Positions 3,201 through 14,560 of a DNA stretch of 64,000 nt are shown in pieces. The translations under genes and the position numbers were made by a program. Source of the stretch: Camelus dromedarius (lineage: Eukaryota); assembly GCF_036321535.1 (NCBI RefSeq), contig NC_087459.1, forward strand, positions 28,768,001-28,832,000. Direction: 5' to 3'. The notes below the pieces were generated by a model. The model saw nothing but the letters and a program-made list of their open reading frames with translations, was not told where the DNA came from and made no database searches. Each line of letters starts with the position of its first letter. The stretch's first letter is position 1.

Positions 3201-6200
3201 CCTCAAGAGACGAGCAGGAACTCGGATGGCCCAGGGGAAGAACACCAGGAGCTGAGAAGGGGCACTAGACTCTCATAAATAGTTCACAGCACTTTTAATT
3301 AACAGGTCACATATATTTATCATAAATTGCTAATAATCATAATTAGCATTTATTAAGTAACTGGTCTTGTCAGGATCTAGCTTCATCTTCACAACAACCT
3401 TATGAGATAGATAATCTTACTGTGCACATTTTATAGGTGTGGAAATGAACTGGAAAAGGTAAAGAACCTGGCCGGAGGTCACTCAGCAAATGAGTGCTGG
3501 AGCCTGGATTCAAGCTCAGACCCGCCTGACTGGAGGGCGGCTCTGTCCAGCGCCATGGCCACCAGCCACGTGAGGCCAGAGAGCTCGTGAAATATGGCCG
3601 CTGCAAACTGAGATACGCTCTAAGTGTGAAATACACACTGGATTTTGAAGACTCAATAGGGGAAAAAAAAGGTATATAAACGATTTCATTGATTGATAAC
3701 CACTGATTACATGTTGAAATGAGAATATTTGGGACTGAGAAGATGATTTGGGTTAATATAATCTGTTTCCTTGTGCTTTTCTAAAATCTGCTATTAGGAC
3801 ACATACATGCCATGTGAGGCTTGCACACCATCCCCTTCAGATGGCACTGACACAGCACCTGCGCCCCTTCAGAGCCTCTGCTCTGGTAGAACCTTCCGGG
3901 GCGGGGGGGGGTACATCAATCAAGGAAGAACAGTAACTACTGTCCATTGACCTCTCCAATCAGAATTTGCAAGTTCCTTTGGAAGAAGATTCTGGAATGC
4001 CTCATTCTGCCTTGAAAATACCTGAATCNNNNNNNNNNNNNNNNNNNNNNNNNNNNNNNNNNNNNNNNNNNNNNNNNNNNNNNNNNNNNNNNNNNNNNNN
4101 NNNNNNNNNNNNNNNNNNNNNNNNNNNNNNNNNNNNNNNNNNNNNNNNNNNNNNNNNNNNNNNNNNNNNNNNNNNCGCTCTACCACTGAGCTATACCTTC
4201 CCCTCCCAGGGCTCTCTGTCTATGCAGGGCCCCCTGACTTTCCTCAGGATGGAGATGAGGGCCCTGCACCACCTGGTTGGTCTAGCGTCTAATGTATCAT
4301 GGCTGCCAGTGTGAGATGGAGAAATACAGAAACATCAGGACTGCTGGGAGCACTCAGGACAGGGCCACGGATGACAACGGAAACTTCCGCACTGCCCAAC
4401 GTCATGCTGGTCTAAAGTAAGTGCTTAACAAATGTTTCTTATGTGAATAGAGATGACAATCAAAAACCACACGCTGAATGAATGACTCCCCCACTGTGTA
4501 ACCACTGCCAGAGAGCTGACCCCTTGGGAATATCCCTTGGCTCCAAATTCATCTCACCTGGACAGCAGGCGGGGCCAGACCCCAGGGTTTCGGCTCAGCC
4601 TCTCCCTCAGGGGAGCTGAGCGGCCCAGTGGTCTCACCTTATAGAAATTTTCATTGTAGAAGCAATTGCAGGAAGAGGCGTTGATGCAGCGGGAGCCATT
4701 GAAGAAAAAGCCAGGATTGCAAACACAGCCGGGCTTGCAGGGGCGCCCACAGTTGGGTGTGGGGCTCTGGCAGGATGCCGGGCAGGCGCAGGGCTCAAAG
4801 TGGGCATCTGGGGGGCAGTTCACTAAGGGGGAGACAGGCTCCATCAAACCTCCACTCTACAGCTTTTCTCCCATCTCCCCTCTACGCCCTGCTCCCATTC
4901 TCCCAGTCACGAAAGACCACACAGTATATGACTCCCTGTGTATCAAATGTCCACAACAGGAAGATTCATAGAGACAGAACGTAGATGAGTGGTTGCCAAG
5001 GATGTGAAGGTGGGGGAATGGGGTGTAACTGCTAATGGGCACAGACTTCCTCTTTGGGGTGATGAAAGGGCTCTGGAATTGGTAAGTGGCGATGTTCACA
5101 CAATCTTGTGACTCTGTTAAGACCACTGACTTGTATACTTTGAAAAGATGAATTTTTACGGCAGTGAATTATATTTCAACAAAAAAAAGAAGTAGTAGCC
5201 TGGTGCTTGCGTTCCAACCATCCCCACCCCACCCGCGCCCTGCTGTCCCTCTCACTCAGGATTCCTCATCACTTCTTCTAAAGTCACCATGTCTGATTCA
5301 TCTCTCCTCTGAGACTGCAGTTTTCAACTAGAAGCAGCTGTTTCCCCAGCCCTGTCACCCAGTCACTGTCTCTTACTTTCATCTCTTTGTCCAATGCTCC
5401 ACCACATACCTGTAGTGGTGGCCGGGGTCACAGTGGTCATGGAGGTACTTGGAGCACCAGGAGGCACCCCTAGGACTGTTGGCCCAGTGGGTACAAGGGT
5501 AGGGCTGGACAGGGGTGTCGCAGGAGCTCTGGTCCTTTCAGTGGGGATCGTGGGTTTTTCTGTGGGAATGGTGGTCCTTTCAGTGGGAGTGGTGGGTTTT
5601 TCTGTGGGGATGGTGGTCCTTTCAGTGGGAATGGTGGTCCTTTTGGTGGGGACTGTGGGTTTTTCTGTGGGGATGGTGGTCTTTTTAGTGGGAATGGTGG
5701 TCCCTTCAGTGGGAGTGGTGGTCCTTTTAGTGGGAATAGTGGTCTTTTTGGTGGTAGTGGTGGTCCTTTCAGTGGGAGTGGTGGTCCTTTCAGTGGGAGT
5801 GGTGGTCCTTTTAGTGGGAATAGTGGTCTTTTTGGTGGTAGTGGTGGTTCTTTCAGTGGGAATGGTGGTCCTTTCTGTGTGGATGGTGGTCTTTTTGGTG
5901 GGAATGGTGGTCCTTTCAGTGGGAATGGTGGTCCTTTGGGTGGGGACCGTGGGTTTTTCTGTGGGGACGGTGGGTTTTTCTGTGGGGACGGTGGTCCTTT
6001 CTGTGGGGATAGTGGTCCTTTCAGTGGTAATGGTGGTCCTTTCAGTGGGGACGGTGGCCCTTTGGGTGGGGGCCGTGGGTTTTTCTGTGGGGATGGTGGT
6101 CCTTTCTGTGGGGATAGTGGTCCTTTCAGTGGTAATGGTGGTCCTTTCAGTGGGGATGGTGGTCCTTTGGGTGGGGACCGTGGGTTTTTCTGTGGGGATG

Positions 6201-9200
6201 GTGGTCCTTTCTGTGGGGGTGGTGGGCTGCTCAGTGAGCCCAGTGGGTTTTTCTGTGGGCACTGCAGGTTTTCCTGTGGGGACTGTAGGACTTTCTGTGG
6301 GGATTGTAGGTTTTTCAGTGGAAACAGTGGGCTTTTCTGTGGTGACAGTGGCTATTTCACTGGGGACAGATGGTTTTTCTGTGGGGGCCATAGGTTTTTC
6401 TGTGAAGACAGAGGTTTCAGAAGGGACTGTAGTGGGGACTGGAGATTTGGAAGGAAGCACTGTTGGCTCAGGGCCTGTAAAGAAAAAAAATTTCCTGGAG
6501 TTTAGTCAAAATCATACCACCACCCTCTTGACACATCCAACTGGAGTGGGTGGGCTCAAGGGGATAAGTTACTCACACCTCTCCGTCCGCTCCCAGCCCC
6601 AACCTCCACTCAACACTCAACAAGCTGCTCCCCATAGATATCTGATGCTGTGCTGAGTGCAGGAAACACGGAACAAACAGGATATCGGCCCTCCCTGCAG
6701 GATCACCTTTCACTAGGTAAGGGGTCCTGGATCCAAACACAGAAATCCGTGACATCAAAGCCACATTCACTCAAGCAAGCATCTGAGGGGGGCCGGGAAG
6801 GTTACAGGTGGGCAGAGTATAGAAACCAAAGCTGTGTGAGGACTCGGGCACAAGAGGGGACTTGCATTCTGAGGAGCACATGCAGAGAAGCCCAAGAGCT
6901 GGTCACCCCAGAGCATGGCCCCCTTTCTGGGGCCTTGGGTCTTGTCTTACCCCGACAGGTCCCGTGGTTGATCGAGATGAATCCCACAGCAACAACGAAG
7001 GCAGTGTTGGTGCCCCTGACAGCCTCGAATGTCAGCTGAAGGGATGAGGGAGAAAGAAGGAAGAGAGAAACGAAAGGGAACCCCTGGCAACTCAATGACT
7101 CTCTGGGCTCCACTGAAATGTTGCCTTGCGGTGGCCGCCACAGCCCAACGGGGGCCCGCCAGAGAAACTTCTGGGAATCACAGGGTTCCTCTGCTCTGCT
7201 CTTTTCCGGAGTCCCATCCTCTCAGCCCCAGTTGTGCTCTCAGATCCCCAGGCATTAGGTCCCCATCACCAGGCCCCATGGTGACGCTGGCAGGGCCCCT
7301 CTCCGTCTCTCACCTGAATGGGCCGCTGATGTCCCAAAGGGATGGTGACAGAGGCTTTCAGCCAGTCAGGGCTCTGAGACCCAACGCGTTCCCAGAGAGA
7401 ACTTGGGGAACTGCCTGCAGGACTCGCCAGCAGAAGCCTGAGCTTTGCTTCCTCTCCAAGGCCATACATGTGGTAAGCAAACTCCACACAGATCGCACCC
7501 GGGGCGCAGAAGGGCCGGCTCACCAGTCTGAAAGCCTGGCCTGCCTGGGAGACCTTGTCAGTCTCCAGGTAGACATAGTGACCTTCTGGGCAAAAGAAGG
7601 GAACAGGTAAGTTGAGAGACCTCCAGAGGACAAGTGTAGTGTTTTCTTTAGTGACATCTTACTTTCCAAATGGGGATTTGATGCAAACACCCAAACTCCC
7701 CATGTTAGAGTGGGGAATTTTGTTTGCTTGTTTGTTTTGTTTTTTCTTGCTCACTTTAGACTTCTAACAGAAGAAGGCAGGACCAGAAAGAGAGGGAAAA
7801 CCAAACCAGCAACCCAGCTTCCTTTGTTGGCTGCGCCAGTAAATGTCTTGACTGAAAAATGACACTGGATTTTGAAGGCATGGGCTCAATGCAGTGAGAT
7901 GCCTGGATTCTCTGGGGGTTTCAAGTGGCCCAACAAGCACCTGCTGGCTGATCCTCACCACCTACAAGATCTTCCATCAATCACACCAGCCGGGCCCCTC
8001 GCAGAGAGCAAATTCGGTAACTGCTTGGCTAGAGGGGTCCTCCATCTCCTCACCTCCACTGAGGGAGCCTCCGAAGGGGCCTGGACCCTGGATGGGTGTA
8101 CTTTCATTTCCCTGGGTCCAGTGTCCACCATTCTGGGATATCTGGATCCAGTCACAAAAAGGGTGGGCATCGTCTTCAAAGTCACACTGAGGAAAGCTCT
8201 CTGGGGGATCAAAATGGGAGATTTGAGAAATGTGGGCCATGCTCTCTATTTCTGCCCCCCGCTTCTGAGAGCCGCTCTCACCCCCACAGGGAGCGATGCT
8301 GATTGCATCCACCGCCACAGCTGGCTCGGGGATCTTTCCAAACACGCCCACCATGGTGAACTGAAAAGAGAGGGGGCTGGAGTGAGAAAACACCCCAGAC
8401 ATTCAGCCCCTCTCCATCTGATTTTATTCTGTTCAGGGACCCAGGCGCCTCCAGTGCTCCAACCCTCAATCCATTTCTATATCGGGGGTGTATCCCACAT
8501 TCTAGGAGGCTCAATCTCTTGCTTTCCTGTACCTGAATCCGCCCCTGGCCTGTGTAATTGACAGAAACAGGCTGCCAGTTGGGTCCGGGTTGTCCTGAGA
8601 AGAGAGTGTGTTTCTGGATGCTGCCTACAATGGAAGGAATCCGAGAAACTTGTGAGATTAATGGGATGGGAAAATGACTTCAAACTTACACTCAGAAGGA
8701 TGAGTAGCAAAAAGAATACTTGGAGGTCTTCCTCTCCCCTAAGTGCAAGTACATCCATCTCTCTCACTCTTCCGGCATTTTAATCTATTTTTTCCAGAAA
8801 CCAGTGCCCTCCCAGCTCCCCAATTCCACTCCATGGAATAATCTTGCACATATCCCAGATTTCCATAGACACTGAGGGATTCCCCACCTCTCCTTATCAA
8901 CCCAACCCGGGGAGAAGAGCCTCAAGTCATTATAAATCCTGGGGCTTAGCCACTTTTACCCAAGACAGAAGCGTAGATCATGAGGGCTGCACCTGGGGAC
9001 TGGTTATGGAGGGTGTAGTGAAAGGACAGGCTCAGGCAGCCGGAGGACCGGCTCAGAGGGCTCAGGAGGGCAGATTTCTGCCCTGGTTTTGCATTCTTGG
9101 CGTCCAGGAGCATGTAGAAGCCACCTGGGAAGGAAAAGGCCAGTTAAGTGGGGAGGGTGGTGGTGGCTGGAATTAGGGGGTGTATGGCATAGGGTTAGGG

Positions 9201-12200
9201 GCTGCAAGGGCAAGGAGCCTGGCCTGAGGATCCCTAACAGCTGCCTAGGCTCAGCCAGCACTGAGGTGGGTCTACACCTGCCTCACGACTGGCTAAGGCC
9301 TTGGATCCTTCCAGAAGTGTTCGGTAGGTCTGGGTGAGGATGCAGGTACTGCCTAGGAAAAGCGGCATCCTCTCAGAAGCAGCAGCCAGAACCTTGTTCT
9401 TTGGATTCTGACCTTTTAGGTCCCCCAGGGTCATATCCTCTTCCTTTTCTTGGCCCCCTGGACATGGCTGATTCACACAAACTGGTGAGAGAGCGAGCCT
9501 GATACTGACGAGCAGGGGATCCCCTCACCACCACCTTTGCCCGCCACAAGATCAGGCAGCCAATCAGCTTGGACCTCGCTTCGTGACGCAACTGGTAGCG
9601 GGGGTAGGGGGGAAGGGATTAAAGCTGCCGCCGACAGCGCGCACGCGTGCGTGCACCTGCCCAACGCCCACGGGGTTTTGCCTGCTGAGCACGCGCCTCC
9701 GGGGCGGGAAAGGTGGGCTTCTGGAAGGGAGAGAAGACGGAGAAGACGGCTGAAGAGGAAGGAGTGGGCATGAGTGGGAGGGAAGAGGAAAGGAAAGATC
9801 AGAGGAAGGAGAGCATGGAGTTGGGGGTTGGGAAAGATGGACAAGAATGGCCTCTGCCCTTGCCCGGTCCCTTCAGTGGAGTCTCACACAAGAAACCAGG
9901 TGAGCCTTTTAAGCATAAGTCAGGTCTAGTCACTCCTCTGTTCCAAATCGTGCAAAGGCTCCCCATCCATGTAGAATAAAAGCCACAGATAGTCCTGACA
10001 GTGGCCTTCAAGGCTCCACGTGGTCAGCCCCTCCCAGGACAGGTCTGAGCTCATCCTCTTGGGGTCTTTGCATGGCTGGACCCTCTTCTTAGAATGTTCT
10101 TTGCCTCAATAACTTCATGCCTTACTCCCTCACCTCCTTCAAGTTTGTGTTCACATGTGACCTCTATGAGACCTACTCTGACCCCCCGTTTAAAACTTAC
10201 AACCTACCCTACTCTGCTCTCCCAATCCCCTTACTTTGTTCAATTTTTTTTTTCTTTTAGTACTCACCTCATAACTATATAATTTACTTCTTTGTTGTTT
10301 CAGGAACTATCTTTCCATTGCCCCCCCCCCCATCTGTTTTGTAAGCTGTTGCATCTCAAGGGCCTGGGACAGTATCTTGCACATCCTAAGTGCTTAATAA
10401 ATATTTGTTGGATGAATGAAGAATGAAGGGTGCCAGGGAAAAGAGGTGAGGAGCTGGCCGTGTCGGATGGGCCAGGGAGGGCTTTTGGGGGAAGCTGGCT
10501 AGGTGATAGAGTTTGCTTTCTGCTGTATAACTTGGGCTGATAGAGATTTGAGGTTGCTGGGATTCACCCCAGGCCATCCTAAGAGAGTTATGGTCGACTT
10601 GTCAGGCAAACATCGTAAACTCCCACAGAGGTCACTAGAAGAAAGTCAAAGGATGGAAGCGTGGCCACTACTCACTGCCAGGGCTAGAGAAGTCATCCTC
10701 GGGCCCCACGTTCAGTACCCCTGTCGACCCGTTCTTCTGGACCCACTTGGCCCCAGAGGTCGTCGGGATCCAGCTCCAGCCACAGAGATCATTTGGGGTA
10801 TCAAAGCTGCACATTTGCATCATGCAGACTGAGAGGAAAGCAAGGAGGAAGGACTCAGCATTAAGTAAAAGGAGGCAGCTCAGAAAAGTATACCTTAGTC
10901 TGGAGTCAGAATTCTGAGTCCCAATCTGGGTCCTACTGTGAGCCATGGCCGGCTTGCAAGCCATTTAAGATCCCCTCTCCTCAGCCACTGTGTTCCTAGC
11001 ACAGGTTACTTAAGCTTCCTAAGCCTCAGTTTCCCCATCAATGAACTAGGAACAACAGTACCTGCCTGTTGTTAATTACATCACGGGTGGGAGCATCTAG
11101 CACAGGCCTGTCCTCAGTTAAGTGTTAGTTCCTTGCATGCAGCTTCTGGAATGTTCTTTCCCTTGAATTTGTTCCCCTCGAATCTCTAATGTCAGCTCAG
11201 AGGGCTAATTCTGGGTGGATCTGGAGTAACAGGCAGGATGGCCAAACATCCAAGTGTGCCTGGGACTGAGGGTTTCCTGAGTGTGCTAAAATATGGACAG
11301 CCCAGGGCCATCCAGAATGACAGGTGTCACCACAATTCGAGATTCCAAGAGAACCTCTCTTTAGGTGTGACTGCTTCAGAAGTCAAAGGTCTGGGGTGCA
11401 GAAGTAGAGGGAAGCAAGTAGCCTGGAAAGAACCAGGGTCATGGTCCCTGAGCTACCCTGCTAAGGCAGATGTGCAGAGGTGGGGAGAAAGAGGAGTAGG
11501 GACAAGGGCTCACTCCGATTGCAGGAGCCCCGATGGATGGAGATGGCGTCCAGAGCAATGCCCAGGTAAGCAGTGCTGCCCCGCACTCCTTCAAATGTCA
11601 GCTGCGGGAAGGAAGAGGGGATCACCCACCTTGTGAGCCCCTTTGCCTCGGGCTCCCACTTTCCCGCCCGAATTCAGATGGCCTAGCTCCCCGTGTCCCC
11701 TCCTTGTCCCAGCCCAGCCCTTCCTGGGCTCCCCTCACCAAGAACCCAGCCTCTGCCCTCGGCCTCACCCGGCTGGGCAGGACGAGCCCAGTGGGCACCG
11801 AGACGGCAGTGGGCATCCAGGAGGGGCTCTGCGTGTTAGTGTGTTTCCAGAGCACGTTGGGGCGTTTGCCCTTGGTGCCCGTGGTCCGCAGCAGTCTGAG
11901 CTGGGCGCCCCACGACAGCCCGAACATGTAGTAGACGAAGCGCACGCAGAGGGGGCCTTGTTGCCATATTGGGGGGCTGTGCAGGCGGGCCACCCCGCCC
12001 GGGTGGAAGTGGTTTGGTACCATGTACAGGTAGTAGCCCTCTGGGGGAGGCAGAGCCCAGGATGGTGAGGCCCTGCCACCTCCAAGGGCTGCCCCCCACC
12101 CCCTTCCCAGAGCCCAAGCATCCTCTTCCTGCCGCCTCCCTGTACTCGGAACTGCCCATGTCCACCTCCCAGATGCCTCCCTAAGCCTAGGTTTCCTCAC

Positions 12201-13948: not shown

Positions 13949-14049
13949 GCGCGACCTCAGAGGCTGCTCTCAGGGGAGAGAGGAAGGCAGAGTGAGGAGC
14001 CCAGGCCACTTTATACACCCCTGCCCCTCCTCGCTCAGCATCCTTCCAA

Positions 14050-14560
14050 GGACGCCATGAAAACGGGACAATCAAAGAACACAAGAACGCTCTGGGAACC
14101 GAAAACTTCGAGGGCTGAAATGTCAAATCCAATAGAAAAGCTATACATCAAAATCAAGAGAAATAAAATGAGAGCAAGAGCGAAGGAAAGGAAGAGAAAA
14201 AAGAGAGAGACTTGGAGGATGGGTCCAGGAAGCCTACCATTCAACCAGAAGAGTTCAAAAAACAAATTACTTAAGAAAAACCACACAAGGTGATTTCCCA
14301 GAAGTGTGAGTCTCTTGATTAGAAGGGGTCTAGTACGACGAATGCAAAGAGACTCGTGAAAGGCGTGTCGTGGAATTTCAGAATATCAGGGGAGAAGAGA
14401 GGATCCTAAACATCAGACACCAAAAGCAGGTCACGTCCTGAGGATCCAGGAAGAGCATAGCACTGGACTTTTCAATAGCAACCACGGATTCTAAGAGGCA
14501 GTGGAACATTGTCTGCAGAATTCCAAGAGAAAGTCATTTCAAGCCTAAAATTCTGTAGCT
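14050..14560 (+). mobile_element. Ancient L1/HAL1 ORF1-like fragment in the ZAN 5' intron
   Basis: The translation fragment ALDFSIATTDSKRQWNIVCRIPRESHFKPKIL resembles the L1 ORF1 C-terminus; the frame is disrupted. Confidence 0.6.

What the first reader, a model, noticed from the sequence alone, without database searches (positions are those of the whole stretch)
9125..9260. ZAN intron end encodes a broken homolog of the pig zonadhesin N-terminal leader
Seen: on the minus strand, the intron just before the 9124 acceptor translates as ...[17 protein letters not shown] in one frame. After a 1-nt shift in a C-run it reads [18 protein letters not shown] and continues in frame into the exon ([10 protein letters not shown]). 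Recalled, not verified: published pig zonadhesin begins [41 protein letters not shown] and has only one full plus one partial MAM domain. Inference: the pig leader is this intronic sequence, which implies a ZAN transcript starting inside the intron. Here the leader is broken by a frameshift, a TAA (9144-9146, overlapping the likely branch point CTTAAC) and no start Met. An internal transcript would therefore give a leaderless protein from the Met in GFYMLL, or none.
Basis: partly seen in the sequence, partly recalled or inferred. Interest (0 to 1): 0.72.

Follow-up and report, generated by a model that had tools for sequence, protein, structure and literature searches.

The report
Camel counterpart of pig zonadhesin leader
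The end of a camel zonadhesin intron is the non-coding counterpart of the DNA that in pigs encodes the first 31 residues of the published sperm protein, so the pig protein start comes from inside an intron and is a pig-lineage novelty, not a leader that camels broke.

Summary
On the minus strand, 9125-9260 is the 3' end of ZAN intron 6 in a camelid. Its two reading frames and the TAA at 9146-9144 are as described.

In the pig genome, that leader is contiguous with exon 7. The pig cDNA therefore starts inside the intron and reads through the acceptor.

The word "broken" has the polarity wrong:
- The pig ATG is pig-only; the other eight species have CTG or CGG.
- The 1-nt "shift" is an insertion seen only in pig, plus an unrelated one in pika.
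- The pig frame also depends on a pig-only 15-nt deletion.
- No reading frame is shared across the nine species.
- All three frames are often open, so openness is not evidence of coding.
- Only the TAA and a 10-nt insertion are camelid changes.

An internal start is plausible but not proven:
- An invariant inverted CCAAT box lies 396-443 nt upstream of exon 7, inside a CpG islet, from sloth to lemur.
- The rabbit cDNA leader maps to the same intronic block.
- Camelid reproductive-tissue RNA contigs hold the intron tail far better than the upstream intron.

The read-laying step was lost. Interest is moderate.

The parts
9125..9260 (-). 3' end of ZAN intron 6; the non-coding ortholog of the DNA that encodes residues 1-31 of pig zonadhesin Q28983
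   Evidence: Frames. Pig genomic contiguity. Nine-species alignment.
9144..9146 (-). TAA in the exon-7 frame, inside the candidate branch point CTTAAC (9148-9143). Shared by Camelus and vicugna and absent in the seven other species.
9173..9180 (-). C-run (9180-9176) followed by TAA (9175-9173) in the other frame. This is where pig carries one extra base relative to all other species except pika.
9125..9143 (-). Polypyrimidine tract and AG acceptor of exon 7. It translates as LAFSFP, which explains why that part of the 'leader' looks conserved.
   Evidence: Conserved in nine species.
8960..9124 (-). ZAN exon 7, the second exon of MAM domain 2, in phase 1. The Met of GFYMLL is at 9113-9111.
   Evidence: tblastn with the Camelus, pig short and pig long proteins. 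ORFs.
10674..10829 (-). ZAN exon 6, the first exon of MAM domain 2. It is absent from the pig and rabbit cDNA proteins.
9558..9566 (-). Inverted CCAAT box TGATTGGCT, 442 nt upstream of exon 7. Invariant in nine species at 396-443 nt.
9583..9590 (-). CRE-like half-site TGCGTCAC. Present in camel, pig, lemur and pika; mutated in vicugna, dog, oryx and rhino.
9500..9800 (-). CpG islet (GC 0.65, CpG o/e 0.82-0.85) in an otherwise CpG-depleted gene. Candidate internal promoter.
   Evidence: The same islet is seen in vicugna, pig, lemur, rhino, sloth and pika, and has decayed in dog and oryx.
9411..9465 (-). Candidate 3' part of an alternative first exon: ATGs at 9465 and 9434, and a GT donor at 9412-9411. 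If spliced to 9124, the ATG at 9434 would read [15 protein letters not shown] in frame. Hypothetical; vicugna has ACG at 9434.
   Evidence: The rabbit cDNA leader maps to the aligned block in pika.

Best explanation
The stretch is the ordinary 3' end of ZAN intron 6 in a camelid: branch point, polypyrimidine tract and acceptor. It is orthologous to the pig DNA that supplies the first 31 residues of the published pig zonadhesin precursor.

In pig, a transcript that begins inside intron 6 runs unspliced through the exon-7 acceptor. A suid-specific ATG (CTG to ATG), a 15-nt deletion and two 1-nt insertions happen to open a frame into exon 7. The leader is therefore a lineage-specific coding extension made from non-coding DNA. 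It is not an ancestral leader that camels lost.

The transcript most likely comes from an old internal promoter: a CpG islet with an invariant CCAAT box about 400-440 nt upstream of exon 7. The rabbit cDNA also appears to start there, with a different spliced leader.

In the camel, the same transcript would carry several upstream ATGs. It could give only a MAM1-less protein without a signal peptide, starting at the Met of GFYMLL (or, if the 9412 donor is used, at the ATG at 9434), or no protein at all.

Shown: the orthology, the contiguity in pig, and the derived state of the pig ORF. Inferred: the internal promoter and its activity in the camel.
For: - The pig Q28983 N-terminus is exactly as recalled.
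- In the pig genome the leader is contiguous with exon 7 through ttccttcccag|gtggc.
- The pig genome still has canonical exons 1-6, and long models start MAPPLW... with three MAM stretches.
- Nine-species alignment: the ATG is pig-only, the pig-specific indels are -15, +1 and +1, and the camelid-specific changes are +10 nt and the TAA.
- An in-frame ATG upstream of exon 7 exists only in pig (-94) and oryx (-205, a different frame history). There is none in dog, pika, lemur, rhino or sloth.
- Other frames are equally open, for example 259 codons in dog frame 1.
- The inverted CCAAT is invariant in 9/9 species, and the CpG islet is present in 7/9.
- Rabbit cDNA leader residues 22-34 match pika at -298..-260, which is aligned to window ~9470-9430.
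- Reproductive-tissue RNA runs X1-X4 hold 0.42-0.58 of the words of 8900-9800. Of 9720-10380 they hold under 0.05 (X1, X4), 0.20 (X2) and 0.16 (X3).
Against:
- Word shares are coarse, and two of the four runs do hold some upstream intron.
- The rabbit mapping rests on pika and a 13-residue match (E 0.27).
- The CRE-like site is not conserved.
- Dog and oryx have lost the islet.
- The rabbit ATG and a musk-deer model lie at or just after the CCAAT box, so that box may be inside the transcript rather than upstream of it.
- I could not read the pig cDNA 5' UTR or the original papers.
Confidence: 0.7

Rival explanations
1. There is no internal promoter. The 1995 pig cDNA is a 5'-truncated, partly unspliced copy of the canonical pre-mRNA (retained intron 6). 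The CpG islet is an enhancer, or it belongs to something else such as an antisense or unannotated transcript.
For: - The pig leader is simply unspliced intron next to an intact acceptor.
- The pig genome has intact canonical exons 1-6 with a much better signal peptide (best 10-residue KD hydropathy 2.09, against 1.46 for the leader).
- Runs X2 and X3 hold some upstream intron.
- No RNA-derived protein fragment with the leader was found.
Against: - The rabbit cDNA leader is a different, spliced sequence from the same intronic block. Plain intron retention does not give that.
- X1 and X4 hold the tail but under 5% of the upstream intron.
- The CpG islet and invariant CCAAT box are conserved from sloth to lemur.
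- Gnomon models in rabbit (X2), vicugna and lemur start at the exon-7 Met.
Confidence: 0.2
2. One reading: the leader is an ancestral coding N-terminus of an internal ZAN isoform that the camelid lineage broke by a frameshift, a stop and loss of the Met.
For: - The frame into exon 7 is open for 24-90 codons in 7 of 9 species, and only the two camelids have a stop within 6 codons.
- The TAA and the 10-nt insertion are camelid-specific.
Against: - The ATG is pig-only, and the pig frame needs three pig-only indels.
- Dog, rhino, lemur and bat share a different frame from pig and have no ATG.
- Non-exon frames are as open or more open.
- Indels are not multiples of three.
- The majority frame is already closed in pig, oryx and the camelids (TTGGGG to TTAGGG or TTAAAG).
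Confidence: 0.05
3. Chance resemblance between a proline-rich translation of a pyrimidine-rich intron and the pig N-terminus.
For: The leader-only protein match is weak (45% over 28 residues, E 0.19).
Against: The DNA alignment is syntenic and colinear, at 78% identity, and is flanked by the orthologous exon and module in nine species.
Confidence: 0.01

Closest known systems
Pig zonadhesin precursor, Swiss-Prot Q28983 / RefSeq NP_999548.1 (cDNA of Hardy and Garbers 1995)
   Same: Its first 31 residues are encoded by the pig ortholog of window 9125-9240, and from residue 32 on it is exon 7. The '[14 protein letters not shown]' junction is identical in the camel.
   Different: The camel has no ATG, a TAA 22 nt before the exon, a 10-nt insertion, and lacks the pig indels. 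It cannot encode the leader and, by the nine-species comparison, never did.
Rabbit zonadhesin cDNA protein (AAF63342.2, Swiss-Prot entry; P0158)
   Same: It also begins immediately before exon 7 and lacks MAM1 and the first exon of MAM2. Its leader maps (via pika) to the conserved intron-6 block just downstream of the CCAAT box.
   Different: The leader is a different sequence, spliced from an upstream intronic exon rather than read through the intron tail. In the rabbit frame, the camel has a stop (…KKRKRI*).
Alternative internal promoters or first exons of testis-expressed genes that give N-terminally truncated isoforms (general class)
   Same: A CpG islet inside a CpG-poor gene, a conserved CCAAT box, cDNA 5' ends in the intron in two species, and lineage-specific 5' coding sequence.
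   Different: No TSS mapping is available here. The products would lack the canonical signal peptide, so function is doubtful.
Canonical three-MAM zonadhesin (mouse and human cDNAs; Camelus, vicugna and pig long models)
   Same: The window encodes all canonical exons 1-7 and onward, and exon 7 has a normal acceptor.
   Different: The canonical form splices this stretch out.

Membership tests
Splice acceptor region (branch point, polypyrimidine tract, AG) | AG at the intron end, an upstream pyrimidine tract, a yUnAy branch point 18-40 nt upstream, and the exon boundary supported by protein alignment | tested here: met
   AG at 9126-9125, tract at 9143-9127, CTTAAC at 9148-9143. The exon 7 boundary comes from tblastn. 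The pattern is conserved in nine species.
Conserved protein-coding leader (N-terminal exon extension) | A start codon conserved across species | tested here: not met
   The ATG is present only in pig (and warthog, by protein). CTG or CGG is found in camel, vicugna, oryx, dog, rhino, lemur, pika and sloth.
Conserved protein-coding leader (N-terminal exon extension) | Reading frame preserved (indels in multiples of three) and more open than the other frames | tested here: not met
   Indels are -15, +1, +1 (pig), +10 (camelids) and -1 (Camelus). Frames differ between pig and the dog/rhino/lemur group. The other frames are open for up to 259 codons.
Signal peptide | A hydrophobic core of 7-15 residues after a short, often basic n-region | tested here: inconclusive
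   The best 10-residue Kyte-Doolittle mean of the pig leader is 1.46, against 2.09-2.38 for the canonical exon-1 signal peptides. The leader has no basic residue and many prolines. No dedicated predictor was available.
Alternative internal promoter | Transcript 5' ends inside the intron | tested here: inconclusive
   The pig cDNA protein starts in the intron. The rabbit leader maps there via pika. Camelid RNA word shares are 0.42-0.58 on the tail side and <0.05-0.20 upstream.
Alternative internal promoter | Footprint of germline hypomethylation (CpG islet) and conserved core motifs | tested here: met
   CpG o/e is 0.82-0.85 at 9500-9800, against 0.1-0.25 around it. The islet is present in 7/9 species and the inverted CCAAT is invariant in 9/9. 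The CRE-like site is not conserved.
Alternative internal promoter | Promoter activity and tissue specificity | not testable with these tools
   Needs CAGE, 5' RACE or a reporter assay.
Structured RNA gene in the intron | Match to a curated RNA family | tested here: not met
   No Rfam match at E <= 1 in 8900-10380.

The most novel reading that the evidence does not exclude
ZAN carries an ancient internal promoter in intron 6, unmethylated in the germline and present since at least the common ancestor of Xenarthra and Boreoeutheria. It drives MAM1-less transcripts. The 'two-MAM' zonadhesins of pig and rabbit, long treated as species differences in domain structure, would then be isoforms from this promoter. 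Their N-terminal peptides arose de novo and independently from 5' UTR or intron DNA (pig by read-through, rabbit by a spliced first exon). Camelids would make the transcript without any leader.
Probability: 0.5. Interest if true: 0.55.

Novelty: new member of a known kind. Interest (0 to 1): 0.42.

Why it matters
Zonadhesin is a textbook species-specific sperm-egg adhesion protein. The reviewed pig entry (Q28983) and the rabbit entry are cited as having two MAM domains, against three in mouse and human (PMC1325057 repeats this).

The data here show that the pig N-terminus is intron-derived and suid-specific. They also show that the pig genome keeps the canonical signal-peptide exon and the MAM1 and MAM2a exons. 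The reported domain-number difference is therefore probably an isoform or cDNA effect, not a difference in gene structure.

This bears on evolutionary analyses of the MAM region. It also raises the question of which pig isoform reaches the acrosome.

For the camel window itself the stretch is ordinary intron. Nothing was lost there.

Tried and rejected
Read-level starts, strand and junctions were therefore never seen. No letters of 10386-10427 were sent afterwards to any DNA-pattern, genome, paper, findings, run or Rfam search (stop at 10380). Local scripts held them only as a passive part of the window: composition, and the subject of a local BLAST.
2. Two searches for RNA-derived protein fragments joining the intron tail to spliced downstream exons, one with a camelid query and one with a pig query, returned only genomic read-through ORFs.
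3. Look-ups failed for rabbit isoform X2, horse and Pteronotus, so the rabbit leader was mapped on pika only.
4. Ensembl models starting in the intron (dog, panda, yak, musk deer, mink) were rejected as transcript evidence. The dog model bridges two frames with a tiny gap, which looks like protein projection.
5. An open frame upstream of exon 7 was rejected as a sign of coding, because the other frames are as open.
6. The CRE half-site was rejected as a conserved element, because it is lost in vicugna, dog, oryx and rhino.
7. Sliding-window conservation of the intron tail is no higher than that of neighbouring intron 7, so conservation alone says little.
8. The key papers (PMC29746, PMC1223699, PMC2915722, PMC2809229) are not held. 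Full-text searches found nothing on a ZAN alternative promoter.
Full report
**What is there**

The window carries a camelid ZAN gene on the minus strand. Exon peptides are 96-100% identical to Camelus models, and the DNA is 95.7% identical to vicugna.

tblastn with the Camelus and pig proteins places the exons as follows:

| Exon | Coordinates | Note |
|---|---|---|
| 1 | 13948-13871 | |
| 2 | 12878-12810 | |
| 3 | 12348-12202 | |
| 4 | 12041-11768 | |
| 5 | 11604-11515 | |
| 6 | 10829-10674 | first exon of MAM2 |
| 7 | 9124-8960 | |
| 8 | 8634-8533 | |

The finding, 9125-9260, is therefore the last 136 nt of intron 6. The 'LAFSFP' part is the translation of the polypyrimidine tract and acceptor.

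**The pig side**

A profile-free search with the exon peptide, then a region search and a cluster look-up, gave P0178, which is Q28983 / NP_999548.1. The warthog Gnomon model has the same leader with two substitutions.

The pig reference locus L001 settles the main inference. The ATG at L001:10001 is followed without interruption by the leader, the canonical tract ttccttcccag, and exon 7. So the published pig N-terminus is the intron-6 tail read through an intact acceptor.

The pig genome also keeps canonical exons 1-6 upstream. Long pig models start MAPPLW... with three MAM stretches, against two in Q28983 and in the rabbit cDNA protein.

**Is the camel copy 'broken'?**

I fetched dog, pika, oryx, lemur, sloth, rhino and vicugna loci and aligned the intron tails. 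The results are:

- **Start codon.** The pig ATG is unique. Every other species has CTG or CGG.
- **The 1-nt shift.** At the C-run, the shift is an extra base in pig relative to all species but pika.
- **Other pig indels.** Pig also has a private 15-nt deletion and another +1.
- **Camelid changes.** Camelids have a private 10-nt insertion and the TAA, both shared with vicugna. Camelus alone has a 1-nt deletion at 9224.
- **In-frame ATGs.** Upstream of exon 7, only pig (-94) and oryx (-205) have one. Dog, pika, lemur, rhino and sloth have long open stretches but no ATG.
- **Frames.** Dog, rhino, lemur and a bat share a frame different from pig's.
- **Openness.** The two non-exon frames are often just as open, up to 259 codons, because stop trinucleotides are scarce in this GC- and pyrimidine-rich DNA.

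The leader is thus a suid-specific ORF made from non-coding DNA. The camel sequence is its non-coding ortholog, not a decayed copy.

**Where would such a transcript start?**

About 440 nt upstream of exon 7, the window has an inverted CCAAT box (9566-9558) and a CRE-like TGCGTCAC (9590-9583). Both lie inside the only CpG islet of the 5' half of the gene (9500-9800; CpG o/e 0.82-0.85, against 0.1-0.25 around it).

TGATTGGCT is invariant in all nine species, at 396-443 nt from exon 7. The islet is present in camel, vicugna, pig, lemur, rhino, sloth and pika, and has decayed in dog and oryx. The CRE-like site is not conserved. Plain sliding-window conservation is no higher than in intron 7. No Rfam family matches.

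The rabbit cDNA protein begins MFFATG...LREERRIKKRKRQ|DGFYMLLD. Its residues 22-34 match pika at -298..-260. That position aligns with window ~9470-9430, just downstream of the CCAAT box. This would be a second, independently cloned cDNA that starts in the same intronic block, but with a spliced leader. The match is short (E 0.27) and made through a related genome, so I treat it as supportive only.

**Camelid RNA**

Four RNA-Seq runs labelled reproductive system hold the following shares of the sampled words:

| Run | 8900-9800 | 9720-10380 |
|---|---|---|
| X1 | 0.58 | under 0.05 |
| X2 | 0.48 | 0.20 |
| X3 | 0.42 | 0.16 |
| X4 | 0.42 | under 0.05 |

Exon 7 is only 18% of the first stretch. 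At least 150-300 nt of the intron next to exon 7 is therefore in RNA contigs, while the upstream intron is poorly held or absent. This fits a 5' boundary somewhere between about 9420 and 9720. It gives no strand, no start and no splice state.

I worked beside those places afterwards.

**What the camel could make**

- **Unspliced.** The internal transcript has upstream ATGs at 9465, 9434, 9368 and 9190 before the Met at 9113. All end in stops. The Met at 9113 would give a MAM1-less protein without a signal peptide.
- **Spliced.** There is a GT at 9412-9411 (also in rhino and lemur; absent in pig, dog and oryx). If it were spliced to 9124, the ATG at 9434 would read [15 protein letters not shown] in frame. 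But vicugna has ACG there, so I give this little weight.

The pig leader is only weakly hydrophobic (1.46, against 2.09-2.38 for the canonical signal peptides). Whether the short form is targeted to the acrosome is open.

**Literature**

PMC1325057 states that pig and rabbit zonadhesin have two MAM domains. PMC9275260 does not discuss the 5' end. Full-text searches found nothing on an alternative ZAN promoter. The original cDNA papers are not held. I cannot exclude that the intronic origin is noted somewhere I could not read.

**Verdict**

The inference 'pig leader = intron tail' is proven. 'Broken homolog' is rejected in favour of a suid gain. The internal promoter is likely (about 0.6) but unproven.

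The same scan noted the promoter-like module separately (s1-172652). My CpG and CCAAT analysis agrees with that note and extends it.

Noticed in passing
window 9500-9800: The only CpG islet in the 5' half of ZAN sits inside intron 6 (CpG o/e 0.82-0.85). The canonical promoter region upstream of exon 1 (13950-14100) is CpG-poor.
   Followed up: yes
L002 (dog) and L004 (oryx), about 300-500 nt upstream of exon 7: Dog and oryx keep the CCAAT box but have lost the CpG islet and the CGTCA half-site. This suggests the element became methylated or inactive in those lineages.
   Followed up: partly
L007 -1029..-892 and L004 -979..-866 relative to exon 7: The first coding exon of a cat Ensembl model (P0113) maps about 900-1000 nt upstream of exon 7. 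This is a different place in intron 6 from the CCAAT module, and possibly yet another intronic start.
   Followed up: no
pig models P0091, P0185, P0186, P0187 versus P0180, P0183, P0184: Some long pig models are 51 residues shorter between MAM1 and exon 7. This looks like skipping of an exon about the size of exon 6. Not examined.
   Followed up: no
window 5363-6460: The mucin exon carries many near-identical heptad-like repeats ([13 protein letters not shown]) on the minus strand. The opposite strand also gives a long spurious ORF.
   Followed up: no
window about 3990-4160: A run of N (seen as X in ORFs 3920-4186 and 3967-4314) lies inside the ZAN D-domain region.
   Followed up: no
window 12041-11768 versus 9124-8960 plus 8634-8533: The middle part of MAM1 is one exon (274 nt). 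The homologous part of MAM2 is split into exons 7 and 8.
   Followed up: no
   Followed up: no
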